A program made the translations under genes and the position numbers. This document shows, one piece after another, positions 10,568 to 53,552 of a DNA stretch of 64,000 nt (positions are counted from its first letter, which is position 1; each line of letters opens with the position of its first letter). Under the pieces are notes generated by a model. It had not been told where the DNA came from and did not search any database. It saw only the letters and a list, made by a program, of their open reading frames with translations. This stretch comes from Lepidodermella squamata (Eukaryota; Animalia; Gastrotricha): assembly GCA_047495785.1 (NCBI GenBank), contig JBLDXI010000029.1, forward strand, positions 3,782,001-3,846,000, written 5' to 3'.

Positions 10568-11548
10568 TCAGAGCTGCTTAACATCGCACGAAGTTGTAAT
10601 TACAACAGCTGATTCAGATTTTTTAATCAGTGGTTCGTTGTTATTTCCCGAAGAAATCTCCTCATTGGAGCTCTCGCCAGATTTAGCAGCATTCCTCGCC
10701 GGTGATAGTTGATTCGCCACTTTACGAAAATGGATGCACCTGAAAATCGCAAAAACAAGAGCACCAGCGCTGAGAAGCAACAGTACGGCCAATACACCTA
10801 AGGTCACTGATAACGGCTGGATTCTCAATTGATTCCCAGGTCCATTTTCCGCCGGGCCATTTCGCGTTGGCTCAACTTTAACAGGAGTTATTTGGGCAGA
10901 TCGAGTTTCAGGCTTGATGTGGCAGTAGTACTGAAGCACCTTTTCCTGGCCATTGTTCGCCGACCGGCCAGCCCCGTACCATTTCGCCTGGTAACCAGGT
11001 GGGCAGGTAAAATCGCCAGTCACAGGGTTAGGAACATCATCGGATATTGAATTGCCTTCCCGTTGAATCTGGTAGAAACCGCCCAGCTCAGATCCGTTGA
11101 AGAACACGAAGCAAATCGATTGTTTACACGTAACGGGCCGAATGTAGCGATCCTCACTGTCGAGAAAACTCGGCGATAATAGGTTGAAAACGATGGTCTC
11201 ATAGCCAAGCGGGCATGTGAAGGCGTTTGTGACTGGGTTCATCGCTTCAATGGTCGGTAGCTTGCCGTATTTCTCATCGCATTTGAAGAACATCCCGCCA
11301 AACGGGTCGAAGCCTCGTGTCTTAGCGAGGCATAAATGCGTCTCTAAGATTTCTTCCTGGTAGTCCGAAACAGGACTCGCGACCAGGAAATCGGTGGCGT
11401 TATCTGGGCAGTAGGCGTTTTTGTCGTCAAACGTGTTGGCGATCAAAGCGCCGCGGCGATACGAGTACAAGCCGCGGAAGCTTGTTGCCTCGCTGCCTGG
11501 CAGAACTAAGCACCATAATAAAAGAAATGCCGGACGTAGGGGTGTCAT
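10568..11548 (-). CDS. Type I membrane protein with an MPEG1 P2-like ectodomain and short tail (kinase-less paralog of the RTK at 31918-34097)
   Basis: Likely ATG 11548 (signal peptide MTPLRPAFLLLWCLVLPGSEA). Repeats FGGMFF..NPVTNAFTCPLGY and LGGFYQ..NPVTGDFTCPPGY; TM LSVTLGVLAVLLLLSAGALVFAIF; cytoplasmic tail of about 57 aa. Confidence 0.8.
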   Translation of the reverse strand: MTPLRPAFLLLWCLVLPGSEATSFRGLYSYRRGALIANTFDDKNAYCPDNATDFLVASPVSDYQEEILETHLCLAKTRGFDPFGGMFFKCDEKYGKLPTIEAMNPVTNAFTCPLGYETIVFNLLSPSFLDSEDRYIRPVTCKQSICFVFFNGSELGGFYQIQREGNSISDDVPNPVTGDFTCPPGYQAKWYGAGRSANNGQEKVLQYYCHIKPETRSAQITPVKVEPTRNGPAENGPGNQLRIQPLSVTLGVLAVLLLLSAGALVFAIFRCIHFRKVANQLSPARNAAKSGESSNEEISSGNNNEPLIKKSESAVVITTSCDVKQL

Positions 11549-12497
11549 TGTTCCGTAACCATTGCAGCTCCTGAGTCTTGCATTAACTTGGCGCCGTATT
11601 ATACTTAGAGCCTGAATGCTTGTTGTCAAGTATCTGGCTTATTCACTATGGTCAGCAAGCGTATCGCGTCAACAGCCTCGTAAATTAGACCTATTAGTGA
11701 AGGGCAAAATAATCTTTCAAGGCATAAAACAATCAAATTCAGCCTGGTTTTTTTGAATATACCTCTGGGAAAAATTATTATAAAAACAAGGCTTGAGCGT
11801 TTTATTGAAGAGCAGAATCATTTCTAACCACAATCTTAAAATAGGATTAATTGAATGGAATTAGGGAGAGACACGGCGTTTCCCTGAGACTCAATGTGAA
11901 AGACCTCTGATTTTTCTCTGATGGAACCAGACATGATTGAAAATGAAATAAAATTGATTGTTTTTGACCTTGTTGAACACAATAATTGTTTCAAGTATCG
12001 TAGTTAAATCCCATTTATCGATTTCATGTCACTGCGTCTATTATCAAGCTTTTGATAGGTAAAGTAGCACCAAGTACTGGCCGTGCCGTTTTTTATTCTA
12101 AAAATTGAATGAATATGTGGGCGTGCTTTGATTTTCGAGTATCACGAAATATCAATTAACCATTTTTTATTGACCATCTCAGTGCAAATATCGATCGGAT
12201 ATAACCAAAAAAAGGCTCGAACTCCGAAATTTCATTTTTTCGAATTCACTACTCCTCTTTGCCAAAAAAAGAATTCGATAACAAAACAATTGCTTTGTCC
12301 GATAAAAAAAAATTCCAGCTTAAAACGTTTGTATTGTGAACCTTGTTCTTTGCTTGTTTTGCCGAGAAGTACACGGGATACAGTAGTTTTTATGCCGCGC
12401 TCGGTTAAGCACGAATGTATTACACAAGCTACGGTGAGCATTAAGTGATAAAAAAAAGTGAAAGCCAGAGCAACAAAATTACGCATATAATGAAAAT

Positions 12498-14718: not shown

Positions 14719-15876
14719 ATGAAATTTCACTGGTTAGCCATTTTTCTAGCTGAATATGCAGCTGCGAAAGTTCTGACGAGAGCTGACGAATTCTTTGAAG
14801 CATGCCCTAATGTGAGGCAAGAAGTTTATAGCCCTGGTTGTTCGATTGGGCAGGTGGAGAGCGCGGCATCAGGCCGTAATACGGCAATCTGTGACCAGAC
14901 ACCAATTGCAGCAAAATTTTATGCCAGCCGTTTTCACAGAATCGACGAGCCAGCTGAAACGTTCACTGTAGCTGGGTCTCTGAGACTTGAATGGCCTTTA
15001 ACCTGCAGAGATTTCAACAACACTGGAATAGATGAATATTCCCTCAAGTTGAATGAAGACCGATTTTGGACGCCTGGCGTCTACCACAGTAACACGATTG
15101 ACAACTTCGGGATGAGTGGGGATACATTCACGAGCCGCTTTATGGCCTTCTTCAACCTGAATACCTCTGATTTTCGAATTCTTTGGCAAAAATATGGAAT
15201 TTTTTCTTCGTCATGCTCTATGGACTTTGAGAATTTCCCATTTGATGAGCAATCGTGCAGTATCGAATTTTGCCTTCAGGAGAACCGAAATGCAGCAACG
15301 CTTGTTATAGGGGACGGAATACAGATCCTTGGCGGTTTCATGTCACCCAGCAGCAACTGGCAGGTTGTCAATTCCTCGACCCGCACTGATGCTGTGACTT
15401 TCAGTGGAGACAGGGGAAATATTGTATTTTCTATCAAATTCCGGCGTAGACCGGACTTTTACGTTGTTGCGCTTATTCTGCCATGCTTTTTCCTATCAAC
15501 TCTAGAAATCGGTTCAGTCATGATGGAGCCAAAAATGGCTGATCGGCCTGTTTTTGCTGTCACCCTCCTCCTAGCGTTTGTGTTCCTGCAAAGTGAAATT
15601 TTGCAATGGATACCGCCTAAACCTGATCGCTGCTTCCTCAGGACATATACGAACCTTTGCGCTTTGTTCGCTTGGATGAACACGGTGTACACTCTGGTTA
15701 CATTATGCATCGCCCGTTCGAGCATAACCATTGCAAAGTCGACTTATCAAGTATTTTCGCTATCGATAAGCGCCTTACGGATCGTCGATATAGTCGCAGT
15801 AACTCTGGGAAGTCTCTTCCTCATTTCTATAAATTCTATCGCGATCGACACCGCTAAAAAGAGCGAGTATCTGTAA
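14719..15876 (+). CDS. Intronless atypical Cys-loop ligand-gated ion channel subunit, copy 1
   Basis: Signal peptide, FWTPG (loop A), Cys-loop CSMDFENFPFDEQSC, pre-M1 RRRPDFYVVALILPC, four TM segments, very short M3-M4 loop. Confidence 0.9.
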   Translation: MKFHWLAIFLAEYAAAKVLTRADEFFEACPNVRQEVYSPGCSIGQVESAASGRNTAICDQTPIAAKFYASRFHRIDEPAETFTVAGSLRLEWPLTCRDFNNTGIDEYSLKLNEDRFWTPGVYHSNTIDNFGMSGDTFTSRFMAFFNLNTSDFRILWQKYGIFSSSCSMDFENFPFDEQSCSIEFCLQENRNAATLVIGDGIQILGGFMSPSSNWQVVNSSTRTDAVTFSGDRGNIVFSIKFRRRPDFYVVALILPCFFLSTLEIGSVMMEPKMADRPVFAVTLLLAFVFLQSEILQWIPPKPDRCFLRTYTNLCALFAWMNTVYTLVTLCIARSSITIAKSTYQVFSLSISALRIVDIVAVTLGSLFLISINSIAIDTAKKSEYL

Positions 15877-19060: not shown

Positions 19061-19450
19061 GCAGGTAAGCTTCGATCGACGGTGCCATCCTTCCTGAAAA
19101 AGCCCAATTAAAAGCTGGGCCAAACTTCTGCTAATTGGTTGTTTGAGGTGGACAAATAACAAGCTAACGTTATGCACTTAGCCACACTGGAAGAGTTGCG
19201 GTGCAATTGCTTTTGCACGCAGATATTGATAATCGAACACAGAGCTGGAAAACCAGCAGAAATGACGGCCCAGGTGCGTGGAACATTTTGGCTTAGGAAG
19301 CAGTCGAAAATTGAAGGAAATGGTTGTTTAGTAGGAAATTGCAAAATCGGTGCGTAGGAAATCCTGCAAAAGTTATCCAACTCTGATCGAACATTTGTTT
19401 TGGCATCATGGCATCGTTCATGAACTGCTACGAAATATCTATCAGAGGAT
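19061..19450 (+). pseudogene. Decayed copy of the GT32 last exon ahead of channel copy 2
   Basis: GCAGGT..CGATCGACGGTGCCATCCTTC..GCTAATTGG..GCTAACGTTATGCAC matches about 14403-14525, with stops and an internal insertion. Confidence 0.6.
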
Positions 19451-19460
19451 CAAATCAAAA

Positions 19461-20615
19461 ATGAAGCTTTGCTGGTTCGCGGTTTATCTGGTTAAATTCG
19501 TTGCTTCCGAAGTTCGAACGAAAGCTGACGAATTCTTTGAAGCATGCCCTAATGTGAGGCAAGAAGTTTATAGTCCTGGTTGTTCGATTCGGCAGGTGGA
19601 GGATGCGAAAGCAGGCCACATTACGACAATATGTAATCAGACAAGAATCGCAGCGAAATTTTTCCCCAGCCGTTTTCACAGAATCGACGAGCCAGCCGAA
19701 ACGTTCACTATAGCTGGGTCTCTGAGGCTTCAATGGCATATCAATTGCACAGATTTCAAACCTGGGTCGGATGATTATTCCTTCAAGATAAATGAGGACC
19801 AATTTTGGACGCCTGGCATCTACCACAGTAATACGATTGACAACTTCGGGATGAGTGGGGATACATTCACGAGTCGTTTCATGGCTTTATACTTACCTAA
19901 TACTTCTGAGTTCGAATTTGTCTGGCAAAAATACGGGATTTATTCTTCGTCCTGCTCTATGGACTTTGAGAAGTTCCCTTTCGATGAGCAATCTTGTAGC
20001 ATCGAGTTTTGCCTTCAGGAGAACCGAATGGCAGCAACGCTTGCTATTATGGATGGAATCCAGATCCTCGGAGGTTTTATGTCACCTAGCAGCAACTGGC
20101 AGGTCAAAAACTCTTCGACTAGCACCGATGCGATAACTTTCAATGGAGACAGGGGAAATATTGTATTTTCTATCAAATTCCGGCGTAGACCGGACTTTTA
20201 CGTTGTTGCGCTTATTCTACCCTGCTTTTTCCTCTCGACTCTGGAAATCGGTGCAGTGATGATGGAGCCGAAAATGCCAGACAGGCCTGTTTTTGCTGTC
20301 ACCATTCTACTCGCGTTTATATTTCTGCAAAGCGAAATTTTGCATTGGATACCGGCCAAACCTGATGGATGCTTCCTTAGGACATATACCGATCTTTGCG
20401 CTTTATTCTCTTGGTTGATCACCGTTTACACTCTGGTCACAACATGCATCGCCCGCTCGAGCATAACCATTGCAAAGTCGAATTTTAAAGTCTATTCGTT
20501 ATCGATTAGCGCCTTACGGATCGTCGATATAGTCGCAGTAACTCTGGGGAGCCTCTTCCTCATTGCTTTAAATTCTATTGCGATCGACACCGCTAAAAAG
20601 AACGAGTATCTGTGA
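19461..20615 (+). CDS. Intronless atypical Cys-loop channel subunit, copy 2
   Basis: ATG 19461 (MKLCWFAV) by alignment to copy 1; CSMDFEKFPFDEQSC; four TM segments. Confidence 0.9.
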   Translation: MKLCWFAVYLVKFVASEVRTKADEFFEACPNVRQEVYSPGCSIRQVEDAKAGHITTICNQTRIAAKFFPSRFHRIDEPAETFTIAGSLRLQWHINCTDFKPGSDDYSFKINEDQFWTPGIYHSNTIDNFGMSGDTFTSRFMALYLPNTSEFEFVWQKYGIYSSSCSMDFEKFPFDEQSCSIEFCLQENRMAATLAIMDGIQILGGFMSPSSNWQVKNSSTSTDAITFNGDRGNIVFSIKFRRRPDFYVVALILPCFFLSTLEIGAVMMEPKMPDRPVFAVTILLAFIFLQSEILHWIPAKPDGCFLRTYTDLCALFSWLITVYTLVTTCIARSSITIAKSNFKVYSLSISALRIVDIVAVTLGSLFLIALNSIAIDTAKKNEYL

Positions 20616-22976: not shown

Positions 22977-23778
22977 AATTTTTCCGATCTAGGATTTATA
23001 TTTTCCCAGTGGCAAAATTCAGCAAAAATTCATCGATTGAGGCTTTGGTTATGCAGGCCCTGCCGCCTACATTTTCTAAAGTTTCGATTCGACTGGATGC
23101 CAGTCATTTACTTATATTTAGCCTCACTGACGAAGCTACTGTATACAGCCCAATTTTGATCGTAGCCCGAATTTTCGTTCAGGTATGAGAAGAAGGACAA
23201 AAAGAACCCAAGCGCGCATTTTTCACACTTCCTTCACACAGTATGTGATCTCCGTTCACTGCTTTCATCAGCTATAACTCACAGAAATCACGCACATGCG
23301 GGTGACGCAAATAAACGAATGTGCAAATTTGCAGCAGTTGTACGTGATTTCGATTGAGTCATTGATCGATAATGCCCGCATCTACCTATATTTCCTAGAG
23401 TTTGGATCCAACTTGGCGCCAATCGTTTATATTGAGCTTGACTTATTGAGGTACTAAATACAGTATATTGTTACAATCCGCATCGAAAAAAACAAAGTAA
23501 AATTGCATGCCTTTTTGATATCGATAAGCGGTTACTCCATTAAGAAGCCTTATTCTAATTGCCGTTAAATCGATAGGATTTAAAACCACTGAAAATAGCG
23601 CGATTCTCCAAGTTGTTTATTGGCTAACCATACGTCCAATTGTTTAAAGCTATCGTATCACGTTTCTGTTCAACAATGTTTTGCGTATTTTGACTGTCCG
23701 ATTCTGAAATATTCCAATCTCGGAGGATCATAACTAAGCTAGAAAATGAAGGCCGTAGATCAAGGTCACGGTTCCAGC
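22610..23778. repeat. Segmental duplication block (other copies at about 29446-30128 and 30897-32072)
   Basis: Colinear high identity over LamG exon 1, its upstream region and the RTK last exon (23630-23778 matches 31925-32072). Confidence 0.85.
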
Positions 23779-24199
23779 GAGAGATGGCTCCAAGAGCTGG
23801 GCCATGTAGTCGAGCATGAAGAACATCAGTCAGCAGAAGCGGTGAGAATGAAAGGCTAACACAAGATGAGATGAGTAGTGAGCCTTATCAAAGATTGATA
23901 TAAATAAAGACTAATCGCTCCAATTTGCATTGGCGTTGTTTGAGGGTGATTGGTATAATGGTACCACCTGCTCACAAGCGGGAGACGGGAGTGAAGCGCA
24001 TCTAAGGACGCGTGGAATTCCACAGCCCCGTTTTCGCCGCGCGGAATCCAAATTGTAGCATCGCCGAGGAAGTTTTCCCCGACGGCGGCATAACGTATCG
24101 CAGCTTCCAAGACGAGAATATTACTTTTGTCGCTCTTGGTAAGGATAGTACCCCCGGGTAGTCCAAGTGGGGGGTCGCCACCCATATGGCGTAGCAAAC

Positions 24200-24890
24200 G
24201 TACCACGTCCCGCTTCAAATTCACACCGCCTGGGGACATTGTCGCATATTGGCCAACCTGTCGTTGCAGCGAAGCGAATGGCCTTCATTGGCCTGGCCTG
24301 TGGGTCCTTCTTGTGGAGGAATGAGTGGGCATCGTGAACAATGAGATCGACGACCTTTCGGTCGAGGCCGGAGAGGAGGTGGCGGACTCGGTCAAGTGCC
24401 GTGTAGGCATTCAAGACCTGCAGCTGGTCCTAAGCACTCAGCAACTCATCGAACGTCGAGCGGGCGACGGTCGCCAGATGACAACGGAGCCTCGCCGGCA
24501 CCTGGAAAGTCTTGACTAGCTCCAGGAGGCGACCTTCTTCTTTCGGAGAAGGGCGGCCAAGAGCATCCGTTGGCCGCAGTGACGTACGGCGGACAAAAAG
24601 AAGCCCAACCGCTTCTGGGCCTCGCCGTGGTCCGGAGCTGGGGGAGCCACCACCGCGGTGTTGGCGGCTCGATAAAGCGCAAGAACCCCTTGAAGCTATA
24701 TTTGGAGATCGAGGAAAGGCGTCATTTCGGTCCATTTTGCTGGAGCTAAACAGCCTCTATTTGCACGCGCGAAGAATTTCAATCAGCATCGCCTCAATTC
24801 CATGCTGATCTTTTGATTGCCGCTGTTTAAACCAGACTGTAATTCCTCCACGCTCTTGAATTCCGTCTTGCGACAACCAACGAATTTAAT
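24200..24890 (-). mobile_element. GC-rich decayed coding remnant, possibly retroelement gag-like
   Basis: Broken frames (QKRLGFFLSAVRHC..; STFDELLSA*DQLQVLNAY..) with stops and frameshifts; no diagnostic motif. Confidence 0.25.
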
Positions 24891-25365
24891 CTATACCGTA
24901 CGAATGGAGAAGAGCAATAGGTGGCATGAATTCATTTCGTGATAATTACATTTGCTGGAGCATCCGGCTAATTACCCGATGGCGTTTATATTTCTATTTG
25001 CCTCTATCTTTCACATTGCACTCATGATATATAATTCAAACATAAAAGGGGATCAGAACATTTTCCTACATCGCCTTTGTTCGCATAACACAACAAAGTT
25101 CCCCGGCTATAGCGCATGTTGCATCAGCTGCGATGTTTTTTTACTGAAGATCGGGGGAGGAAGGGGAGGGGAGGGGGTAGAACACGTGGGAAAGTAGTCA
25201 CCCAGTAAAATCCACTGAAATTGGCGGAACTTTCCGATATTTTCCCTAAAGCGGTAAACATGTTTTGTCACGTACCGCCCAGCTCTCATTGCTTCAGCTG
25301 CACCACGCATGTTTTCTGTTTTCTCTGTCCTTAGTTAGTACAAGAGTTTTCGTACGAGAAACGCC

Positions 25366-25371
25366 TATAAA
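25366..25371 (+). promoter_or_regulatory. Candidate TATA box of the PAN/apple gene
   Basis: TATAAA about 70 nt upstream of ATG 25439. Confidence 0.4.
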
Positions 25372-25438
25372 TTACTGCGTAATTGTTCGATAAAACATTC
25401 TTCAAATTTGATATTCGTTTTCGTCATAAACTCAAGCT

Positions 25439-25848
25439 ATGTCTAACAAGCTCGCAGTCGTCTTAGCTCTGACGTTCGTGGCTGGCATTTGCTCAGCAGG
25501 TGAGCTATTTTTCATCGGGAAATATGGCCATGTTATTCAATGCGATTCTTGATTCGTGAAGGTTTCTCGGCTGTGACTGGCGATTGTCGATCACGTATGA
25601 ACAACACGAACATAGACATAAATCCACCCAATCTAATCGAGCTTATGACCCGCCCAGCTACTCTGATGGATGAGGAAGCCTGCAGAACCTTCTGCGTATT
25701 AAAATCAAAATGTAATGCCGTCACGTTCGCGACTTCCGTCGGCACAACCGATCGCAGGTGCTACCTGCTAACAGGGTGCTATTATGGTGGTATCGGGCCC
25801 GCGACGAATGGCACCAAGAACTGGATCCTACCATTCCGAGCCGTGTGA
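25439..25848 (+). CDS. Small secreted PAN/apple-domain protein, 2 exons
   Basis: Exon 1 (25439-25499) encodes MSNKLAVVLALTFVAGICSA; 62-nt intron; EEACRTFCVLKSKCNAVTF...RCYL PAN pattern; AATAAA at 25916. Confidence 0.75.
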
Positions 25849-26859
25849 GCGGTGAGAATGAAGGGCTAATGCCGTAAGATGAGATGAGTACTGAGCCTTA
25901 TCAGAGTTTGATTTAAATAAAGATTAATAGGTCCAATGGCGTTGGCGTTATTTAGACTAAATTAGTCCCATTTTCGCATGTCAAAGGGAAGAGTCATGCC
26001 AAGAAAAAGTAAACACTTGCGGGGTGAAACCCTGATAGCCCATAGGAGACTCATAGGTTCTGTTGGCAACAGGTAGGGTACTTCGGATCCACTCCGAACT
26101 TGTGAGCTGTGGAAGACGGGCCGGACCGTGAAGGGACAGTTCTACCGGGAGAGCAATATAACTGCTTTCTCAAAATCACACAGCGCAACCGACTGCATTA
26201 GCTTCAGAAAAAATCAGGATAACTTGGAGCTAGTATCGCTCTATTACTAGCGGGGCCTTTCGCTAGGGAGCTGACTTGGAATGGTGCCAGGAACAACGCC
26301 GCGCATACCAGATAAAAGATAAACCATTCCCGGCTTCTCTGGCTTCAGTGTTTTGACTCGGTTTACCTTCTTGGGTAACCTGTTTGGAACACTGCCAAGC
26401 TTTAGTGTAGCCGTTGATACACTCATTTTGAACCAGTTCCCGCATCCCGCTATTGAAAAATGCAGATAATAGCAAAGCCGTGATCAAAGGGGCGCCTAAT
26501 CAAAATCGGTCCTGCAACAAAAAGTCTGCGGTTAGAGCTTTCTTTATCGCTTCTTGGTCGAAAAATTACATTCTTCACTCTGAATTCATACTAATTTAAG
26601 GTACGCCCCTGCCTAATGTTAAAACGATAACTTACGGTTACTCAAGTCAATAGCTTCGTCGAAAATGAGATAGGACTCTGTTCCAGAAGCGGCTCTATGC
26701 CTAAAGATATCAATGTTCAACTTCTTAAAACCTGCTTTTGAAGTTGTGATATATTCGTAACCCAATATTCATGATCAGAATAAAAAGGAGTCCGTGTAGA
26801 CCACTTGTTATTTAGGAGCTCGAATCTGACTGTTTCACTCTCGTAAAATAAAAGTCGTA

Positions 26860-27979: not shown

Positions 27980-29128
27980 TTAGATACTCCTTTTAGCGGT
28001 GTCGATCGCTATCGAATTTATAGCAATTAGGAATAGGCTTCCAATAGCGATTGCAAGTATATCGACGAAGCGTAGGGCGCTTATCGATACAGAGAAGATC
28101 CGATAACTTGACTTTGCAATCGTTTCGTTCCAGCGGGCGATGCAGATTGTGACCAGAGTGTAAACGGTGTTCAACCAAGCGAATAAAGCGCAAAGATTGG
28201 TATAGGTCCTCAGGAAGCATCGATCAGGCTTGGGCGGTATCCATTGCAAAATTTCACTTTGCAGGAAAACGAATGCGAGGAGTAGGGTGACAGCAAAAAC
28301 TGGCCGGTCCGGCATTTTCGGCTCCATCATAATTGAGCCGATTTCTAGAGTCGATAGGAAAAAGCATGGCAGAATAAGCGCAACAACGTAAAAGTCCGGT
28401 CTACGCCGGAATTTGATGGAAAATACGGCATTGCCCCGGTCTCCACTGCAAGTGACCGCGTCAGTGTACGTCGAAGAGTTTGTAATCAGCCAATTGCTAC
28501 TTGGTGACATGAAGCCTCTAAGTATCTGTATTCCGTCCCTGATAACAAGCGTTGCTGCATTTCGGTTCTCCTGGAGGCAAAATTCGATACTGCAAGATTG
28601 CTCATCAAAAGGGAATTTCTCAAAGTCCATAGAGCAGGACGAAGAAAAAATGCCGTATTTTTGCCAACGAATTTGGAAAACCGAGGTGTTCATGTGGTAA
28701 AAAGCCAAAAAACGACTCGTAAATGTATCACCAGTCATCCCAAAATGGTCAATCGTGTTACTGTGGTAGATGCCAGGCGTCCAAAATTGATCTTCAGCTA
28801 ATTTGAGGGAATAATCGTCCAAACCAGGGTTGAAATCCCTGCAATTAATACGCCATTCGAGCATCAGAGACCCAGCTATAGTAAAAATTTCAGCTGGTTC
28901 ATCGATTCTGTGAAAACGGCTGGCGAAAAATTTTGCCGCGATTTGTGTCTGATCACAGATTCCCGTAATGTGGCCTGCTCTCGCACTTTCCACCTGTCCA
29001 TTCAAACAATCAGAGCTATAAACGTATTGCCTTACTGTAGGGCATGTTTCAAAAAATTTCTCAGCTGTCGAAAGATCCTTAGAAGCAGCAAATTTAACTA
29101 GAAAAATGATATACCAGTAAAATTCCAT
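27980..29128 (-). CDS. Intronless atypical Cys-loop channel subunit, copy 3 (inverted)
   Basis: 382-aa paralog of copies 1 and 2 with the same Cys-loop and four TM segments. Confidence 0.9.
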   Translation of the reverse strand: MEFYWYIIFLVKFAASKDLSTAEKFFETCPTVRQYVYSSDCLNGQVESARAGHITGICDQTQIAAKFFASRFHRIDEPAEIFTIAGSLMLEWRINCRDFNPGLDDYSLKLAEDQFWTPGIYHSNTIDHFGMTGDTFTSRFLAFYHMNTSVFQIRWQKYGIFSSSCSMDFEKFPFDEQSCSIEFCLQENRNAATLVIRDGIQILRGFMSPSSNWLITNSSTYTDAVTCSGDRGNAVFSIKFRRRPDFYVVALILPCFFLSTLEIGSIMMEPKMPDRPVFAVTLLLAFVFLQSEILQWIPPKPDRCFLRTYTNLCALFAWLNTVYTLVTICIARWNETIAKSSYRIFSVSISALRFVDILAIAIGSLFLIAINSIAIDTAKRSI

Positions 29129-31267: not shown

Positions 31268-31917
31268 AATTTTTCCGATATGTATCGGATTTGTATTTTC
31301 CCAGTGGTAAAATTCAGCAAAAACTCCATCGATTGAGGCTGAGGTTATGCAGGCACCTGCCGCCTACATTTTCTGAAGTTTCGATTCGACTAGGCGCCAA
31401 TCATTTACTTATATTTAGCCTCACTGACGAAGCTACTGTATACAGCCTAATTTTGATCGTAGCCCAAATTTTCGTTCAGGTATGAGACAAAGAACAAAAA
31501 GAACCTAAGCGCGCATTTTCACACTTCCTTCACACATTTATGTGATCTCCGTTTACTTTCATCAGTTATAACCCACAGAGATCACGCACATGCGGGTGAC
31601 GCAAATAAACGAATGTGCAGGTTTGCAGCAGTTGTACGTGATATCGATCGAGGCGTTGATCGATAATGCCTGCTTCTGGAGTTTCGATCCGACTTGGCGC
31701 CAATCGTTTATATTAAGCTGGACCTATCGATGTACTAAAAACAGTCTAGTCACAATCCGCATCAAAATAAAACAAAGAAAATTTGCAGGCCTTTTTGATA
31801 TCGATAAGCGCCACGCGGGTTTGCGGTTATACTCTATCAAGAAGCCTTATTCTAATTGCTGCTAAATCGATATGATTTGAAACCACTGAAAATAGCGATT
31901 TCCAGGTTTTCTATTGG

Positions 31918-34097
31918 TTACTTGTACGTCCAATTGTTTAAAGCTATCGTATCACGTTTCTGTTCAACAATGTTTTGCGTATGTTGACAGTCCGATTCTG
32001 AAATATTCCAATCTCGGATAATCATAACTAAGCTAGAAAATGAAGGCCGTAGATCAAGGTCACGGTTCCAGCATGCTGAAATCACCTCATCGAACCTTAA
32101 AATAAAACACAATTATCTCCATGAATGTCATGACTTACAGTTCAAGGAACTTACAGTTTTGCAGGGCATCTATCAGGTTTAGCCAAGCGACCTTCAGCTT
32201 GCAAAAGGTTCACGATTTCAGTAGGCGACATCCCAGCGTAAGGTTTGACACCACCAGCAAAAATTTCCCACATCACCACTCCGAATGACCAGACGTCACT
32301 CTTCTCCTCAAAAACGCCTTTTAGCAAGGATTCAAGAGGATGCCAGGCGATGGGCAACGGTCTGTCGTAGTTAGCTGGTCTGTAGTAGTCGCAAGATACT
32401 AAATGCCGTGACATCCCAAAATCGGCGATTTTAAGCAATCCTTTCTCGTCCATCAAAACATTTCTAGCTGCTAAATCACGATGTATGAACTTATTTTCGG
32501 ACATATAGGCCATTCCATTTGCAATCTGGATGCAGTAGTTGAGCATATCTTGGTTAGTTAGATCTAAAAACTTGCTGCGAAGGTAATCCCTAAGATTCCC
32601 ATTCGCCATAAAAGGTACAACTAGATGAGGTTGGTCGAATAATAGCGAGATTCCTAGCAGTTCGATTACATTTGGATGATGAAATGTTTGCATGACATTA
32701 GCTTCTTTCAAAAGGTCCAACAAGTCCTCACGATCCCTGGATTTGTGAACTTTCACAGCTACCTTAATTTCGTGAGAATCAGGACCTGATTTCTCCGGGC
32801 GCCAGGTTGGCTGGAGCAAACGCATTGTAGCACTGTAAACAAAGCCGAAATTACCATCGCCGATCAATTTACCGAAAATTAATTGATCGTTTTGAACAAG
32901 AAAAGCCTCAGCCATTCGAGCGATATCTTCACTGCCACCTAGGTCGTTTACAACTTTTCGAACTCGCCCTTTCTCAGCTTCGTCGATTTCAGGCTTGGAA
33001 GTTTGAGTTGGAACCAAGTAAACCTCCCGTGTCCCTGATACAATCGAATCCATCTTGTCTTGATCGGCGAGTAACAAGCTTCGTAATTTAGCTCGATCGT
33101 TGGGGTTCACGCTCTTGAGGTTTTCAAATTCAGGCTTGACGTAGTATGTCCCAGTTGTTGACGTGGCTTGCGATGAACCGGGCTGTAACTTATTTTCCTG
33201 CTCATCCTTGTGGATTATTAAAAGTTTTTGCCTGTAAAATTGGCATTTTCTCGTGTATTTGAATAGACAACATAAGGAAATCGCGAGACACGACGCCAAA
33301 GTTGCTATAATTGGTAGGGTGATGACTGGTTTCAAGATGACTTCATCCTTCGACTCCACCCCCTTTAGATCTTCGACTCTAATTTGTCTGGTGAAGTTCG
33401 CCGTCTCGTTAAAATCAGTCTGAGTCGCTGTTGTAGTGAATTTGACCGTTGTAACTGATTTCAAACAGTAGAATTGCATAATTCTCGCGTGGTCGTCATT
33501 CGGAGCCCGTCCAGCGCCATACCAAACTGCATTATAATCAGCAGGGCAGTCATACTTGTTAGTAACTGGGTTTGAAACAGAATCAACACTCGCAGCACCA
33601 TCGCCTCTTTTCTGGAAAAACCCCCCTAGAGCCGAACCATATCGATAGTTGAAGCAAATCGTTTGAACACATCGAGACTGTACAGTTTCATTCCTTGCTG
33701 AACTGAAATATTTAGGGGACGCGACTGGTAGTGAAATTTTTCCCATCCCACCAGGGCAGGTCAACGCGTTTGTCATCGGGTTGACGGCATTGAACTTTTT
33801 CGCCTCGTTTTCGCAGGTAAAAAACATCCCGCCCAGGCTGTTTTGCGAGTCGCAAAGATTTTCCTTGGATAGACATAGGTGAACTTGCAACGTGTCGTCA
33901 TTAACATCTGAACCAGCATTTCCTACAAGGTAATCTTCAGCGTCCTTCGGGCAGTAACTAGAGTCGAATCCGGAATTGGCGATGATAATACCCGGGCGGT
34001 GTGAATAGATTCCTCGAAAATTTGATTGAGATACTTGACTTGAGATTGGATTGGCGAAAATTGAAATAGCAAAAAGGCTTATCACTAGTATGTTCAT
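31918..34097 (-). CDS. Receptor tyrosine kinase (MET/RON/RYK-like catalytic domain) with an MPEG1 P2-like ectodomain, about 706 aa, 2 exons
   Basis: Likely ATG 34097 (signal peptide MNILVISLFAISIFANPISS); TM VITLPIIATLASCLAISLCCLF; GDGNFG, VAVK, HRDLAARN, DFGMSR..DYY, SDVWSFG. A 59-nt intron (32154-32096) supplies subdomain XI, CWNRDLDLRPSF. Confidence 0.9.
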
Positions 34098-34676
34098 TTG
34101 CAGTTGTGAATGCGTTTTTTGTTTCAGACGAAAAGCATCGTCGAATGTGAGCAGCATGTTGTAGAATGAGTCAGTATTGTATCCATTTCCGGTAGCAAAT
34201 TTGCATAGCCAATTAGTTGTTTTCAACTGTCAGGAAATTAAAACCATACGTACGTAGAGAAATTCCGATCTTCATCGAGCACTCAATATGCTATTTCTAA
34301 GGGTTTATTTTATGATGTTGTTTACTTTGATCATGACTCATTTTTCATTGTAATAACAGGTTGACCCTCTTTTCGAGTGTTTATACTCATTTTACCAGCT
34401 AAATTTTCCAGTATGTTTGGAATCTTCATCCTGCCGAATAGTTGATGTTATTTCATCCATTTTTTGTCCGGAGAATTTCCTTTGGTTGGTGGGTCAAAAA
34501 GTCAAAAAAGAAAGATTAAGCAAATGAATCACAATCGCGTGCGGTTTTGGTGAATGAAAAAATGCCACGTGTAAACAATCCTCTCTCCTTATCACAGCTG
34601 GCCAGTATAAAGTCCAAGCTTACAAAGCCAGAATCCATTATACCGGCATTCAATTCAAAACAACTCGATTCATAGA

Positions 34677-35692
34677 ATGGCTAGTGACTGGAGTATCAAA
34701 GGCAAGGTTGCTATCATAACCGGGGCTAACACTGGCCTAGGCCGAGAGACTGCTCTCGACCTAGTAAGAAAAGGAGCCGGCCGTGTAATTCTTGCATGCC
34801 GAAATCTCGAAACTGGCGAGGCAGCAGTCAAATACATCCGCGAAAAGGCCGGAATTACCGACGAAGCTGAGGCAAATCGTCGATTGGCGCTCCGGAAACT
34901 GGACCTCGCCTCGCTTGAGTCGATCCGAGACTTCGCGAAGACAATCTATAAAGAAGAGAAGGAATTGCATGTCCTCATCAACAATGCCGGTCTCTACGCG
35001 CCACGGGTCAAACAATTGACTGCTGATGGCTTCGAACTGACCTTCGGAACTAACCACCTTGGCCACTTCCTGCTGACAAATCTTCTTCTTGATCTATTGA
35101 AAAAGTATTTGAGCCTTTTTTGTGGAGCAAATGTGAATTTCGATTATTTTTAGGTCTAAACCGAGCCGTGTTGTAGTTCTTTCTTCAATGGCCTACCAAT
35201 TCGTCGCCCCATTCGGTTTTCACATTGATGATCCCAACTACGAGAAAAGTTGGTACGAAGCTTGGTTGGCCTATTGCCACTCTAAACTGGCCAATATTCT
35301 GTTCGCCCGAGAACTTCACAAGCGGCTCAACAGCAGCAGCGATTCAGGGGTGACAGTTTACAGCCTTCATCCAGGTGTTGTTAACACTGAGTTTATGCGG
35401 CATCGTCACTGGCTGATTCAAGCGGTGATCCAGCCTTTTGTGCCGTTTTTCTACTCGACGATTGAGCAAGGTATCCAAACAACGATTCACTGCGCTACGC
35501 AACCAGGCATTGAAAAGTATTCTGGTCAATACTTTACGTGAGTTCTTCGATTTATTTGAGAAATAGATATAGATTCATCATGTTTCAAATTTCAGAAATA
35601 GCCGTGTTACTGATACTTGGGGCTGCGCGAAGGACGAGGTTGTCGCTGCTAGATTGTGGCAGATCAGTGAAGAAATGACCAAGGAAAAATAG
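34677..35692 (+). CDS. Retinol dehydrogenase 11-14-like short-chain dehydrogenase, 3 exons
   Basis: TGANTGLG, NNAG, GTNHLGHFLLT, YCHSK, LHPGVVNT, RLWQISEEM. Exons 34677-35104, 35154-35537 and 35596-35692; TATAAA near 34607. Confidence 0.92.
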
Positions 35693-50846: not shown

Positions 50847-53552
50847 GAAATGAAATGAAATGAAATGATTTATTTGTTTCTCTTCCCCGCGACTAGACGT
50901 CTGTACCCTTTCGGGTTTTGAGGAAGGCGAAGGCAAGGCAAACCAAAAAGAAAAATTTTAGTCACCCTCCCCCACAACCGAGAAAATCTTACTTTTGTTA
51001 TAAAATTCAAAATCTTCCAGAGACTCAACTATTTTTCGCCATTCAACTCGATCTAATGCCGTTGTTTCGGTAAATGTCCAGTCAACAGTTTTTTCGGAAA
51101 TTTCGGTTACATTACTACCATCTTTACGAGGTCTGCCACGGGACCCGTCGGTTTTTTTTCTTATTATATTTTCTGTTGTAAGTCCTACTTTACTTAAACT
51201 TCTTTCAACCGTATCTAGCCATCTAGTTCGAGGTTTCCCCACCGGTCTCTTCCATTCCTTAGGCGCAACCCACCTATAAAGGTCGTAGACTGGCCCCGGT
51301 GGTATCGGTTCACCTTTGTCGTCGACATAGGTCTCCATCCTTATTATATGACCTAGGTAATTAAGTCGTTGTTTTTCAATTAATCTACCGACTTCAATTA
51401 TTCCGCCACACATTGATAGTCTGATATCTATGTTGGGAATATAGTCCATTACTGTAATTCCTAAAATGCATCGCAGCCACTTATATTCTTGGGTATTTAG
51501 CGTACTTTCGTCGTCTTCCGTAATATTCCATGACTCGCAGGCATACATCATAGCTGGAATAATAACGCATTTTAATATTTTTAATTTTACCGCCAAAGAG
51601 ACATGTTTTCGGTTGCACATAAATTTACTTATCGCGCCAAAGCAACTACCTGCTTTCGCAATGCGCGCTTTAAGTTCCTCGCCGATTTTGCCATCATCAG
51701 TTATAAAGCTACCTAGATACTTGAACGTGCTTACTTTTTCAAGATTGCGACCCTCTAATTGTAAATTATATTTTTCATTTTTCTTTGGGTCACCACCTAT
51801 AATCATATATTGAGTCTTCGCCGCGTTAATTTTGAGACCCAATTCTTTACAAGCCGCGTCGAAAATTCCTAATAACAACTTAATTTCTTTGTGATTCATG
51901 CCTAACAGCGTTCCATCATCGGCGAAAGCCAAAATATTCAGAAAATTTTTTCCCAACGGAAAGCCGACCTTTTCATTAGCGACTTTTTCACAGATTTTAT
52001 TGAAGGTAGTAATAAAAAGAAGAGGAGATAAGGGGCATCCCTGCCTGAGGCCTCTATTCACGTAGAAAAATTCTGATAACTTCCCATCGATTTTAACTGC
52101 CACCTCATTTTTCACGTATAGACTCTTAATGGCTGCTATTAATTCAGGGTTTACTTTCATTTCTTCGAGAGTTTCCCATACTTTTTTTCGGTCGACCAAG
52201 TCGTACGCCTTTTCTAAATCAATAAAAACTAGATGTAATTCCTGATGAAATTCTATAATTTTCTCAATGACTCGTCGTAACACAAATATGCAATCTCTGG
52301 TTCCTTTAAGAGGCTGAAAACCAAATTGAAATTTGGAAATGTTCCTACCCAACGAGGCGCGCAATTTTCTCTCCAGAATAATTGCATACAGTTTACTAAT
52401 TACACTTAACAGAGTTATACCTCGGTAATTTTTACATTGCGACTTCTCCCCTTTGTTTTTATAAAGTGGGGTTATAATTGCTGAGCACCAGTCATCCGGA
52501 ATTTTCTTTTCCCTCCAAATTCGATTCATTAAATTTAAAAGCCATTCCTTGTTTTCCTCATCTAAAGCCTTAATCATTTCGGGTCGAATTTCGTCTATTC
52601 CTGGGGCTTTACCGTTTTTCATATGGTCAATGGCACTCCTAATTTCCTCGATAGATATTCCTTTTATATCAGAGTTCGAAGCCATATTTAGGGGCTCATC
52701 TGGGGTCTCCTGGAATAGGTCAGTGCCCTCTAAGAGCTCTTTAAAATAGTCCTTCATGGTGTCTAGAATTTCCTCAAGTTCGTCTACAAAAGATCCTTGC
52801 TCAGTTTCTAAGGTTTTTGGGCCTTTGCTAGACTTATTCGTTCCCCTAAGCTTTTTTACTTTGGCCCAGAATTTTTTGAGGTCTTCCCATTCCGAAGATT
52901 TTTCCCCAAGAGAATTCAATTCACTAAAAATTTCAATTTCCTGATTTTTTTGAAGTCGCTTAACCATTTTATTTCGAATATTGCGCATCTTCACGTATTC
53001 TTCCTTCGGTATGAGGCCTTTCTGGTATTTTGAGAAAGTTTCTTTCGTCTTTTTACAAATATCATAGGCCTCAGGGTGCCACCATGGTGGTTTTTCTCTC
53101 CCTCTGCCCACTTTTCTTTCCCCACAGGCTTCTCTTGCGGCGTCTAAGATCGCCGTTTTGGTTTTAAGCCAATTTTCCTCGGTCTCTATCGCTTCATCAG
53201 AGTTATCTGACCTTCTTACTTTAATTTTTTCGTTATAATCGAGTTTAATTTCCTCTTCTCTCAGGCTCTGGTGTTTAATAACTTTCTTGGCAGGTTCAGC
53301 GGGTTTACCTAGAGGTTTTATATAAATTTCGCCGATGATCAAGCGATGGTCGGACTCGAAGATAGGATCTTCCAGCACTAAACAGTTGTTAAACAAATTT
53401 TTAATCGATTTATCTATTAAAATATAATCTATGAATGACTTATTTTTCCCCCTTTTCCATGTGTAGCCACAATTTGGGAAGAACGTATTAACGAAGCATA
53501 AATTATTCGAGCTCGCAAAGTCATGCCATTTCAACCCCTTGTCGTTCCGAAA
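50847..53552 (-). mobile_element. 5'-truncated RTE-clade-like LINE with an uninterrupted EN(partial)-RT ORF (50958-53534)
   Basis: NTFF, IDYIL, SDH, NYRGITL, FIDLEKAYD, GLRQGCPLSP, AFADD, YLGH..RM, GKPRTRW. 3' tail (TTTCA)n; 12-bp TSD TCTTTTTAAAAT at 50835-50846 and 53553-53564. Confidence 0.92.

What the first reader, a model, noticed from the sequence alone, without database searches (positions are those of the whole stretch)
31918..34097. Receptor tyrosine kinase with a perforin-2/MPEG1 P2-like ectodomain
Seen: signal peptide, an ectodomain of about 190 aa with three pseudo-repeats (FRGIYS..YCP; LGGMFF..NPMTNALTCPGG; LGGFFQ..NPVTNKYDCPADY), a Thr-rich stalk, TM and a complete tyrosine kinase with MET-like segments (PHLVVPFMANGNLRDYLR, DYY activation loop, LPIAWHPLES). 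Known, from memory: the FGG.(Y/F)..NP.T...CP.GY repeat characterises the membrane-binding P2 beta-prism region of MPEG1/perforin-2, normally attached to a MACPF pore domain. I know of no RTK class with this ectodomain. Inference: a bactericidal targeting module has been shuffled onto a signalling kinase, giving a candidate microbial or lipid pattern-recognition RTK. Caveat: similar motifs also occur in some bacterial proteins.
Basis: partly seen in the sequence, partly recalled or inferred. Interest (0 to 1): 0.88.

Follow-up and report, generated by a model that had tools for sequence, protein, structure and literature searches.

The report
Tyrosine-kinase receptor with perforin-2-like ectodomain
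An unidentified small invertebrate has an intact, transcribed cell-surface tyrosine-kinase receptor whose outer part is the "P2" domain otherwise known only as the accessory domain of perforin-type pore-forming proteins; I found this receptor design in no paper or database, and what it binds is unknown.

Summary
The minus-strand gene has two exons (34097..32155 and 32095..31918, with a 59-nt GT..AG intron) and encodes 706 aa. The parts are a signal peptide, a three-repeat domain of about 190 aa, a Thr-rich stalk, one membrane helix and a tyrosine kinase with all catalytic motifs.

The ectodomain is homologous to the perforin-2/MPEG1 P2 domain.
- Its sequence relatives are C-terminal modules of MACPF proteins.
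- A family profile hits only MPEG1 P2 in the PDB (E about 1e-9).
- A pLDDT-89 model matches mouse P2 at Z 9.8-9.9. Every other PDB match is also a MACPF accessory domain.

It is the short type of the domain. It lacks the long disulfide-stiffened lipid-binding hairpin of MPEG1, so lipid or microbe binding is not supported.

The gene is a mosaic. Residues 25-212 match a neighbouring kinase-less membrane paralog. Residues 358 to the end match Venus-flytrap receptor kinases of the same genome. The kinase lies in a lineage-specific clade, not the MET family.

A second intact copy (contig C46, dS 0.17, dN/dS 0.15) and a spliced contig in a probable RNA run argue for function. The scan had already noted the C46 copy (s1-373951). 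I found no paper or database protein that joins P2 to a kinase.

Verdict: a new variant of a known kind, with unknown ligand.

The parts
32155..34097 (-). Coding exon 1 (residues 1-648): signal peptide, P2-like domain, stalk, membrane helix, juxtamembrane region and most of the kinase in one open frame
   Evidence: Pfam
32096..32154 (-). 59-nt GT..AG intron
   Evidence: Sequence; in-frame join. One contig of run X1 skips exactly these 59 letters (table 5). The intron is conserved with substitutions in the C46 copy.
31918..32095 (-). Coding exon 2 (residues 649-706 plus the stop): end of the kinase C-lobe (CW..D..RPSF) and a short tail
34035..34097 (-). Signal peptide, residues 1-21
   Evidence: N-terminal hydrophobic segment; sequence
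33462..34025 (-). P2-like three-repeat all-beta domain, residues 25-212 (repeats start at F27, L88 and L157)
33672..33716 (-). Short insert in repeat 2 (residues 128-142), at the position where MPEG1-type P2 domains carry the long Cys-rich hairpin. The model shows a mini-hairpin Y130-V139 with sequon N136-E-T at the tip.
33330..33461 (-). Thr-rich stalk with two N-glycosylation sequons, residues 213-256
33258..33329 (-). Single membrane helix, residues about 257-280, followed by the basic stop-transfer KYTRK
   Evidence: hydropathy
32877..33257 (-). Juxtamembrane region, residues 281-407. From residue 358 (EVYLVP) onward it is homologous to the flytrap receptor kinase of contigs C16/C103.
31999..32876 (-). 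Tyrosine kinase domain, residues 408 to about 680 (this span includes the intron)
10568..11551 (-). Kinase-less paralog in the same window: signal peptide, P2-like domain (39% identical over residues 25-244), membrane helix and a Ser-rich tail of about 70 aa
23630..23780 (-). Relic copy of part of exon 2 plus the 3' flank (76% aa identity). Unrelated sequence precedes it, and there is no kinase upstream.
   Evidence: a loose end of run X2 matches its flank

Best explanation
This is a real, intact and probably expressed single-pass receptor tyrosine kinase. Its ligand-binding part is one copy of the three-repeat all-beta domain known as the P2 domain of perforin-2/MPEG1. The copy is the short form, without the lipid-binding hairpin.

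Shown: the gene is a mosaic. The signal peptide and P2-like domain come from the lineage of a neighbouring kinase-less membrane protein. The distal juxtamembrane region and kinase come from a lineage-specific receptor kinase clade whose nearest members carry Venus-flytrap ectodomains.

Inferred mechanism: the P2-like domain binds an extracellular ligand. The ligand is most likely a surface-exposed glycan, lipid head group or protein, because the same domain family serves as the accessory module of pore-forming MACPF proteins and of a toxin-like protein in this genome. Binding clusters the receptors. The kinases then phosphorylate each other on the activation-loop tyrosines (Y571, Y572, Y577) and on juxtamembrane tyrosines (Y318, Y319 and Y360, the last in a YLVP motif), which recruit SH2 proteins. 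The ligand, and any role in immunity, are unknown.
For: Gene and protein anatomy.

P2 homology by sequence: the 14 phmmer hits include many MACPF C-terminal modules. An 18-sequence alignment has invariant G-G, N, C-P and Cys columns. Its profile hits only MPEG1 in the PDB, E 8e-10 to 7e-9.

P2 homology by structure: the AlphaFold model has pLDDT 89.2 and pTM 0.85. Foldseek's first 14 hits are all MPEG1, probability up to 0.99. VIA-align gives Z 9.9, rmsd 3.6-4.0 A over 114-116 residues. A scan of 48,161 chains found 7 with Z >= 2, all MACPF accessory domains: P2 at 9.8, apicomplexan APC-beta at 3.8-4.1, Mpf2Ba1 and Plu-MACPF at 2.3-2.7. The top ESM Atlas row is the chordate MPEG1 cluster.

Mosaic origin: 39% identity to the paralog over residues 25-244, E 3e-49. 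51-64% identity to the C16/C103 flytrap RTK from residue 358. In the kinase tree the gene groups with that RTK and an environmental ANF_receptor RTK at 98/99 support, inside a 98/97 clade of this genome's RTKs. That clade is separate from the MET/RON/TAM clade.

Function retained: a second intact copy lies on contig C46. It differs at 37 of 706 aa, with dS 0.17 and dN/dS 0.15 overall (P2-like domain 0.24, kinase 0.09).

Transcription: run X1 covers 31600-33923 but not the 5' flank, and one of its contigs lacks exactly the 59-nt intron.
Against: No binding or kinase assay exists.

Foldseek's global TM-score to P2 is only 0.22-0.24. The good superposition covers repeats 2-3 only (model residues 66-198), repeat 1 is degenerate, and the register between pseudo-repeats is ambiguous.

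The MPEG1 lipid-binding hairpin is absent, so function cannot be carried over from MPEG1.

The RNA evidence is thin. X1 is only guessed to be RNA. Its contigs are 108-160 nt long, and none spans ectodomain to kinase. The splice joint rests on one contig with a 21-letter side. The first 170 nt or so of the CDS are uncovered.

No ortholog with this architecture was found outside this genome and its near relative, so deeper conservation is unknown.
Confidence: 0.75

Rival explanations
1. One reading: the receptor is an innate-immune pattern-recognition RTK. Its P2-like domain binds microbial envelopes or anionic lipids as MPEG1 does. It shares its recognition module with the genome's MACPF-P2 and toxin-like P2 effectors.
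For: The isolated MPEG1 P2 domain binds negatively charged lipids and is thought to start contact with bacterial membranes (PMC7937864, PMC7593815). The same genome has MACPF+P2 genes, a P2-only gene and a toxin-like+Sushi+P2 gene, so sensor and effectors could share a targeting module. All structural relatives are membrane-targeting domains of pore formers.
Against: In MPEG1, lipid binding depends on the extended hairpin, and deleting the hairpin abolished liposome binding (PMC7937864). In this protein the gap between the repeat-2 Cys and the next G-G is 44 residues. It is 77-78 residues with 7-10 extra Cys in this genome's MPEG1-type P2 domains, and 68 in mouse. The tip of the mini-hairpin carries an N-glycosylation sequon, and in the paralog it is acidic. 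The two copies differ under purifying selection (P2-like dN/dS 0.24), not diversifying selection. No expression data after infection exist.
Confidence: 0.2
2. The receptor senses an endogenous ligand, such as a secreted protein, a matrix or self-surface glycan, or the neighbouring kinase-less paralog acting as co-receptor or decoy. It then serves development, adhesion or physiology rather than immunity.
For: Most RTKs bind endogenous ligands (established knowledge). The kinase clade's nearest members have flytrap ectodomains typical of small-molecule or nutrient sensing. The P2-like domain is under purifying selection. A paralog with the same ectodomain and no kinase lies 22 kb away, and the pair is kept together in the C46 copy.
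Against: No candidate ligand is known, and no interaction was tested. The domain family is otherwise attached to attack proteins.
Confidence: 0.3
3. The similarity to P2 is convergent or superficial: a generic Cys-containing beta-rich repeat unrelated to MPEG1.
For: Sequence identity to mouse P2 is only about 19%. The Foldseek TM-score is 0.22-0.24. Only two of the three repeats superpose. Pfam has no model for the domain.
Against: The profile search of 177,635 PDB sequences returned MPEG1 and nothing else. An exhaustive structural scan returned only MACPF accessory domains, with P2 far above the rest. The intermediate relatives physically follow MACPF domains.
Confidence: 0.05
4. The gene is an assembly chimera or a decaying pseudogene.
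For: A relic of its last exon lies 8 kb away beside a GC-rich insert, so the locus has been rearranged. The RNA evidence is thin.
Against: The reading frame is uninterrupted across ectodomain, membrane helix and kinase within a single exon. The same structure is intact in a second copy at dS 0.17 with dN/dS 0.15. The stretch is present in two independent public runs. One contig is spliced.
Confidence: 0.03

Closest known systems
P2 domain (also called the divergent MABP beta-prism) of perforin-2/MPEG1; PDB 6SB1, 6SB4, 6SB3, 6U23
   Same: It has three pseudo-repeats with the (F/L)GG-x-(F/Y) ... NP-x-T ... CP-x-G(Y/F) ... C motif. It gives the only PDB profile hit (E about 1e-9) and the best structural match (Z 9.8-9.9). 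Like MPEG1, the protein is a type I membrane protein with the domain just outside the membrane.
   Different: No MACPF or EGF-like domain precedes it. It lacks the long disulfide-stiffened hairpin with a hydrophobic tip that binds lipid (44 residues versus 68-78). Repeat 1 is degenerate. A tyrosine kinase follows instead of a short trafficking tail.
Hairpin-less P2-like triple repeats at the C-terminus of protist and environmental MACPF proteins (for example Amoeba proteus and the foraminifer Bolivina argentea)
   Same: These are the closest sequence relatives (E 5.6e-11 to 8e-4, 29-40% identity). Their repeat lengths are the same, 38-45 residues between the Cys and the next G-G.
   Different: Most sit behind a MACPF pore-forming domain. 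None of the 10 scanned with Pfam carries a kinase.
Flytrap (ANF_receptor-type) receptor tyrosine kinases of the same genome (contigs C16/C103) and environmental protein P0017
   Same: These are the nearest kinase relatives: 51-64% identity from the distal juxtamembrane region onward, in one clade at 98/99 support.
   Different: Their ectodomain is a Venus flytrap, not a P2-like domain. No similarity is detectable before residue 358.
MET/RON and TAM (TYRO3/AXL/MER) receptor tyrosine kinases
   Same: These are the best solved-structure matches of the kinase (E about 1e-50 to 1e-46). They share the W-x-x-L-E-S type P+1 segment and the double tyrosine in the activation loop.
   Different: About 40% identity only, tied with ROS and FGFR. 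In the tree the gene lies outside the MET/RON/TAM clade. It has no Sema/PSI/TIG or Ig/FN3 ectodomain.
APC-beta domain of apicomplexan perforin-like proteins (TgPLP1 5OUO/6D7A, PvPLP1 7PLN)
   Same: It is also a three-repeat beta-rich membrane-targeting accessory domain of a MACPF protein, and the second-best structural class (Z 3.8-4.1 over 129-149 residues).
   Different: The Z-score is low, there is no sequence similarity, and the repeat motif differs.

Membership tests
Receptor tyrosine kinases (type I membrane protein with a PF07714 catalytic domain) | Tyrosine-kinase catalytic domain with intact catalytic motifs | tested here: met
   PF07714 at 2.8e-73. GDGNFG, VAVK, HRDLAARN, DFG, DYY, PIAWHPLES and SDVWSFG are present.
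Receptor tyrosine kinases (type I membrane protein with a PF07714 catalytic domain) | Signal peptide, extracellular domain and a single membrane helix N-terminal to the kinase | tested here: met
   Hydropathy shows only two hydrophobic segments, residues 1-21 and about 253-280. No dedicated predictor was available.
Receptor tyrosine kinases (type I membrane protein with a PF07714 catalytic domain) | Ligand-dependent tyrosine autophosphorylation | not testable with these tools
   Needs a biochemical assay.
P2-type accessory domain of MACPF proteins (domain-level family) | Three pseudo-repeats with the GG ... NP-x-T ... CP-x-G(Y/F) ... C motif, with significant profile similarity to MPEG1 P2 | tested here: met
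   Alignment. The profile hits only MPEG1 P2 in the PDB, E 8.3e-10. Repeat 1 is degenerate (FRG, no NP-x-T).
P2-type accessory domain of MACPF proteins (domain-level family) | The P2 fold | tested here: met
   The model has pLDDT 89. Z is 9.8-9.9, rmsd 3.6-4.0 A over 114-116 residues. Only repeats 2-3 superpose, and the Foldseek TM-score is 0.23.
Perforin-2/MPEG1 (the whole protein family) | N-terminal MACPF pore-forming domain | tested here: not met
   No MACPF hit in Pfam. The signal peptide directly precedes the P2-like domain. The upstream neighbour is a divergently transcribed dehydrogenase gene.
Perforin-2/MPEG1 (the whole protein family) | Extended disulfide-stiffened beta-hairpin with a hydrophobic tip in the P2 domain (the lipid-binding element) | tested here: not met
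   Repeat-2 spacing is 44 residues with 2 Cys. It is 77-78 with 7-10 extra Cys in this genome's MPEG1-type P2 domains and 68 in mouse. The mini-hairpin tip carries the NET sequon.
MET/RON receptor family | Sema, PSI and TIG/IPT ectodomain | tested here: not met
   None is found by Pfam.
MET/RON receptor family | Kinase domain grouping with MET/RON in a phylogeny | tested here: not met
   The gene falls in a lineage-specific clade (98/97) separate from the clade holding MET/RON and TAM (97/90). The tree has 37 rows and a midpoint root.
Flytrap receptor kinases of this genome | Kinase and distal juxtamembrane region of that clade | tested here: met
   51-64% identity from residue 358 on; clade support 98/99.
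Flytrap receptor kinases of this genome | ANF_receptor/Venus-flytrap ectodomain | tested here: not met
   No PF01094 hit. The ectodomain is P2-like instead.

The most novel reading that the evidence does not exclude
The animal uses one recognition module, the P2-like domain, on both the sensing and the killing arms of a defence system. The module sits on a tyrosine-kinase receptor (with a kinase-less partner) that detects a microbial or damaged-membrane surface and signals. It also sits on MACPF pore formers and a toxin-like protein that attack the same surface. That would make this a direct, non-LRR, non-lectin pattern-recognition receptor tyrosine kinase, a class not known in animals.
Probability: 0.15. 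Interest if true: 0.85.

Novelty: new variant of a known kind. Interest (0 to 1): 0.6.

Why it matters
[quoted passage not shown] In this genome it occurs as an autonomous, portable module in several settings:
- on a receptor tyrosine kinase;
- on a kinase-less membrane protein;
- on a toxin-like protein;
- alone, as a P2-only gene.

This shows that the domain folds and presumably binds something without a MACPF partner. It also offers a small, hairpin-less version for working out what the core of the P2 domain recognises.

For receptor kinase evolution, the gene is a clean, datable example of ectodomain replacement inside a lineage-specific RTK expansion. Donor-like relatives of both halves are still present in the same genome. 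If the ligand proved to be microbial, it would be a new kind of animal pattern-recognition receptor.

Tried and rejected
Searches that found nothing:
- phmmer of the ectodomain alone against the PDB: no hit at E <= 10. A family profile was needed.
- Word-indexed search of 5.8 billion proteins with residues 1-260: 1164 candidates, none at E <= 0.01. So no close ortholog of 356-1134 aa is in that collection.
- ESM Atlas search by features: no usable hit.
- Scan of the 120 best kinase relatives with the P2-like HMM: no hit.
- JGI metagenome contigs: the 18-row alignment was too divergent to seed the scan. The 5-row alignment gave 371 pattern matches, none confirmed by tblastn.
- Literature: no paper holds perforin-2, "P2 domain" and receptor tyrosine kinase together. 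MABP + tyrosine kinase + MPEG1 gave only irrelevant papers. The holozoan tyrosine kinome survey mentions neither MACPF nor perforin.

Readings rejected:
- MET-family membership, on the kinase tree.
- Canonical MABP (ESCRT MVB12) as the fold: no such chain reached Z 2 in the unbiased scan. I therefore claim only "P2-like".

Organism identity, not resolved:
- No COX1 gene is in the assembly.
- An EF-2 exon is only 61-70% identical to any database protein, and its named top hits are mostly protostomes.
- Earlier agents guessed gastrotrich, rotifer or nematode. I could not decide between these.
- The contig of the nearest environmental kinase relative comes from a metagenome with no taxon.

Other points:
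- The ADP-ribosyltransferase label for the toxin-like P2 protein was not confirmed. It has only a sub-threshold Pfam DUF7587 hit and a weak match to an Rhs-family protein chain (E 0.003).
- I did not run complex prediction, because the report claims no specific protein pair binds.
Full report
**1. The observation**

The longest ORF in the region lies on the minus strand, 34226..32151. The first ATG, at 34097, opens a typical signal peptide. The frame ends just after a GTAAGT donor. A 59-nt intron (32154..32096, ending TTTTAAG) joins it in frame to a last exon that stops at 31918. The product has 706 aa.

Hydropathy finds only two hydrophobic segments: residues 1-21, and about 253-280 followed by KYTRK. 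The ectodomain has nine cysteines and three N-glycosylation sequons. A TTTAT-containing stalk precedes the membrane helix.

The cytoplasmic part matches Pfam PF07714 at 2.8e-73. It carries every catalytic motif: GDGNFG, VAVK, HRDLAARN, DFG, a DYY activation loop, PIAWHPLES and SDVWSFG, with RPSF in exon 2.

**2. What the ectodomain is**

Pfam has nothing for it. Single-sequence searches of the PDB and of a word-indexed 5.8-billion-protein set were blank.

An exhaustive phmmer search of 1.84 billion cluster representatives gave 14 hits, the best at 5.6e-11. I scanned 10 of them with Pfam. Seven have a MACPF hit at E <= 0.01, five of these above Pfam's cut-off, with the matching region C-terminal to the MACPF domain. 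Two of the hits come from Amoeba proteus and the foraminifer Bolivina argentea.

I aligned 18 three-repeat modules. The alignment shows invariant G-G, N, C-P and Cys columns in each repeat. A profile built from it hits only MPEG1 among 177,635 PDB sequences, inside the P2 domain, at E 8e-10 to 7e-9.

With that alignment AlphaFold gives a confident all-beta model (pLDDT 89.2, pTM 0.85).
- Foldseek's first 14 PDB hits are all perforin-2/MPEG1, with probability up to 0.99. The global TM-score is only about 0.23.
- VIA-align gives Z 9.9, rmsd 3.6-4.0 A over 114-116 residues against the mouse P2 crystal structures. The match covers repeats 2-3.
- A scan of 48,161 representative chains that does not depend on Foldseek found only seven with Z >= 2. 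All seven are accessory domains of MACPF proteins: P2 at 9.8, the human MPEG1 entry 6U23 at 5.8, three apicomplexan APC-beta entries at 3.8-4.1, and Mpf2Ba1 and Plu-MACPF at 2.3-2.7.
- The top ESM Atlas row is the chordate MPEG1 cluster.

**3. How it differs from MPEG1's P2**

Reviews describe the P2 domain's most prominent feature as an extended, disulfide-stiffened hairpin with a hydrophobic tip. This hairpin binds negatively charged lipids, and deleting it abolishes liposome binding (PMC7937864, PMC7593815).

I measured the spacing from the repeat-2 motif Cys to the next G-G:

| Protein | Spacing (residues) | Extra Cys |
|---|---|---|
| This receptor | 44 | 2 |
| Kinase-less paralog | 44 | 2 |
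| Protist modules and the toxin-like fusion | 37-45 | 1-2 |
| This genome's long-hairpin P2 genes (MACPF-P2 genes L011, L012; P2-only gene L017) | 77-78 | 7-10 |
| Mouse MPEG1 | 68 | not counted |

In the model the short insert forms a mini-hairpin (Y130-V139) whose tip carries the sequon N136-E-T. In the paralog the tip is acidic. The receptor therefore has the hairpin-less form of the domain. The lipid-binding mechanism of MPEG1 cannot be carried over to it.

**4. Origin**

The genome (121 Mb, 151 contigs) holds several related genes:
- a kinase-less paralog 22 kb away in this window (10568..11551, minus strand; 39% identity over residues 25-244, E 3e-49);
- a second copy of both genes on contig C46;
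- a toxin-like + Sushi + P2-like gene;
- several MACPF + P2 genes and a P2-only gene.

The kinase has at least 55 relatives in the genome. The nearest are on C16 and C103. They encode receptors with an ANF_receptor/Venus-flytrap ectodomain and are 51-64% identical from residue 358 (EVYLVP) onward.

In a maximum-likelihood tree of 37 kinase domains, the gene groups with that receptor and an environmental ANF_receptor RTK (P0017) at 98/99 support. This group sits inside a 98/97 clade of RTKs from this genome. That clade is separate from the one holding MET/RON and TAM. The kinase is therefore not MET-family.

Residues 213-357 (stalk, membrane helix and proximal juxtamembrane region) resemble neither parent. 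The gene is thus a mosaic, and relatives of both halves are still present in the genome. The junction now lies inside a single exon.

**5. Is it functional?**

The C46 copy has the same structure and no lesion. It differs at 37 of 706 residues:

| Region | dN/dS |
|---|---|
| Whole CDS (dS 0.17) | 0.15 |
| P2-like domain | 0.24 |
| Kinase | 0.09 |

This is purifying selection on all parts, with no sign of diversifying selection on the ectodomain.

Two public runs hold the stretch. Run X1 (2015, guessed to be RNA) covers 31600-33923 but nothing in 34025-34500. One of its contigs skips exactly the 59 letters of the predicted intron. That is what a spliced mRNA would give.

The evidence is thin, though. 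The contigs are 108-160 nt, none bridges ectodomain and kinase, and the joint rests on a 21-letter side. The stronger argument that the two halves are read together is that they share one uninterrupted exon.

**6. Mechanism**

Shown: the architecture, the intact catalytic motifs, the P2 homology, the mosaic origin and the purifying selection.

Inferred: the P2-like domain binds an extracellular ligand. Clustering of receptors then leads to trans-phosphorylation of Y571, Y572 and Y577 and of juxtamembrane tyrosines. One of these is Y360 in a YLVP motif that is conserved in the flytrap relatives.

I rate a surface-type ligand (glycan, lipid head group or protein) as most likely, because every relative of the domain is the accessory module of an attack protein. 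I give the specifically microbial or lipid pattern-recognition reading about 0.2 and an endogenous ligand about 0.3. The remainder is undecided.

**7. Known or new?**

[quoted passage not shown] No paper combines perforin-2, "P2 domain" and receptor tyrosine kinase. The holozoan kinome survey mentions neither MACPF nor perforin. None of the 10 sequence relatives scanned with Pfam carries a kinase, and none of the 120 best kinase relatives carries the domain. Metagenome contigs gave nothing.

The sensitivity of these searches is limited. The single-sequence search did not even reach animal MPEG1, so distant P2-kinase fusions elsewhere cannot be excluded.

Ectodomain shuffling in RTKs is itself well known (PMC8662651). 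Earlier notes of this scan describe many exotic RTK ectodomains in this same genome. The scan's first stage also noted the C46 copy of this very gene (s1-373951).

I therefore class it as a new variant of a known kind. It is of real interest for the biology of the P2 domain and as a clean case of receptor evolution, but it has no functional data.

**8. Organism**

The organism is not identified. It is an intron-poor invertebrate genome with Cys-loop receptor genes. Its EF-2 is divergent, and the named best hits are mostly protostomes. Earlier agents guessed gastrotrich, rotifer or nematode.

Noticed in passing
window 10568-11551 (-): Kinase-less paralog: signal peptide, P2-like domain (39% identical to the receptor's), membrane helix and a Ser-rich tail of about 70 aa with no Pfam hit. 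Both genes are also found together on contig C46. It could be a co-receptor or decoy; this was not tested.
   Followed up: partly
window 23630-23780 (-), beside the GC-rich block at about 24000-26000: A relic copy of the receptor's last exon from WNRDLDLRPSF to the stop, plus the 3' flank (76% aa identity). Unrelated sequence precedes it and there is no kinase upstream. The receptor-to-paralog spacing is about 8.5 kb longer here than on C46, so an insertion or rearrangement probably occurred here.
   Followed up: partly
G000 contig C46:446887-448770 and 434084-434662 (L002, L004, L026): A second intact copy of both the receptor and the paralog (receptor 94% nt identity, dS 0.17). This is high for alleles, so it may be a homoeolog or segmental duplicate. 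The C16/C103 flytrap RTK is likewise present twice.
   Followed up: partly
L005:238-2028 (G000 contig C46, about 1.798 Mb): A 596-aa open frame with a toxin-like N-terminal domain (sub-threshold Pfam DUF7587, weak match to an Rhs-family protein chain), a Sushi repeat and a C-terminal P2-like domain 30% identical to the receptor's. An earlier first-stage note calls the N-terminal domain an ADP-ribosyltransferase; I could not confirm that.
   Followed up: partly
L011-L015, L017 (G000 contigs C14 and C24): Tandem MACPF + P2 genes whose P2 domain has a long insert with 10 extra cysteines (the MPEG1-type hairpin position). A P2-only secreted gene lies on the opposite strand in the C14 cluster.
   Followed up: partly
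window 14719-15876 (+), 19350-20615 (+), 27980-29128 (-): Three long single-exon ORFs with a neurotransmitter-gated ion-channel ligand-binding domain (PF02931, E about 1e-14 to 1e-15). They form a local Cys-loop receptor family.
   Followed up: no
window 34677-35541 (+): A two-exon short-chain dehydrogenase-like gene, judged by sequence inspection only. It is transcribed divergently from the receptor, with about 580 bp between the two start codons, which suggests a possible shared promoter region.
   Followed up: no
window 50958-53534 (-): An 858-aa ORF with a reverse transcriptase domain (PF00078, 2.6e-36) in an AT-rich, strand-skewed stretch. It is probably a retroelement.
   Followed up: no
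L022:1138-3231 (G000 contig C20): The EF-2 exon of this genome is only 61-70% identical to any EF-2 among 5.8 billion proteins. That is unusually divergent for an animal housekeeping gene, so this is either a fast-evolving lineage or a paralog.
   Followed up: no
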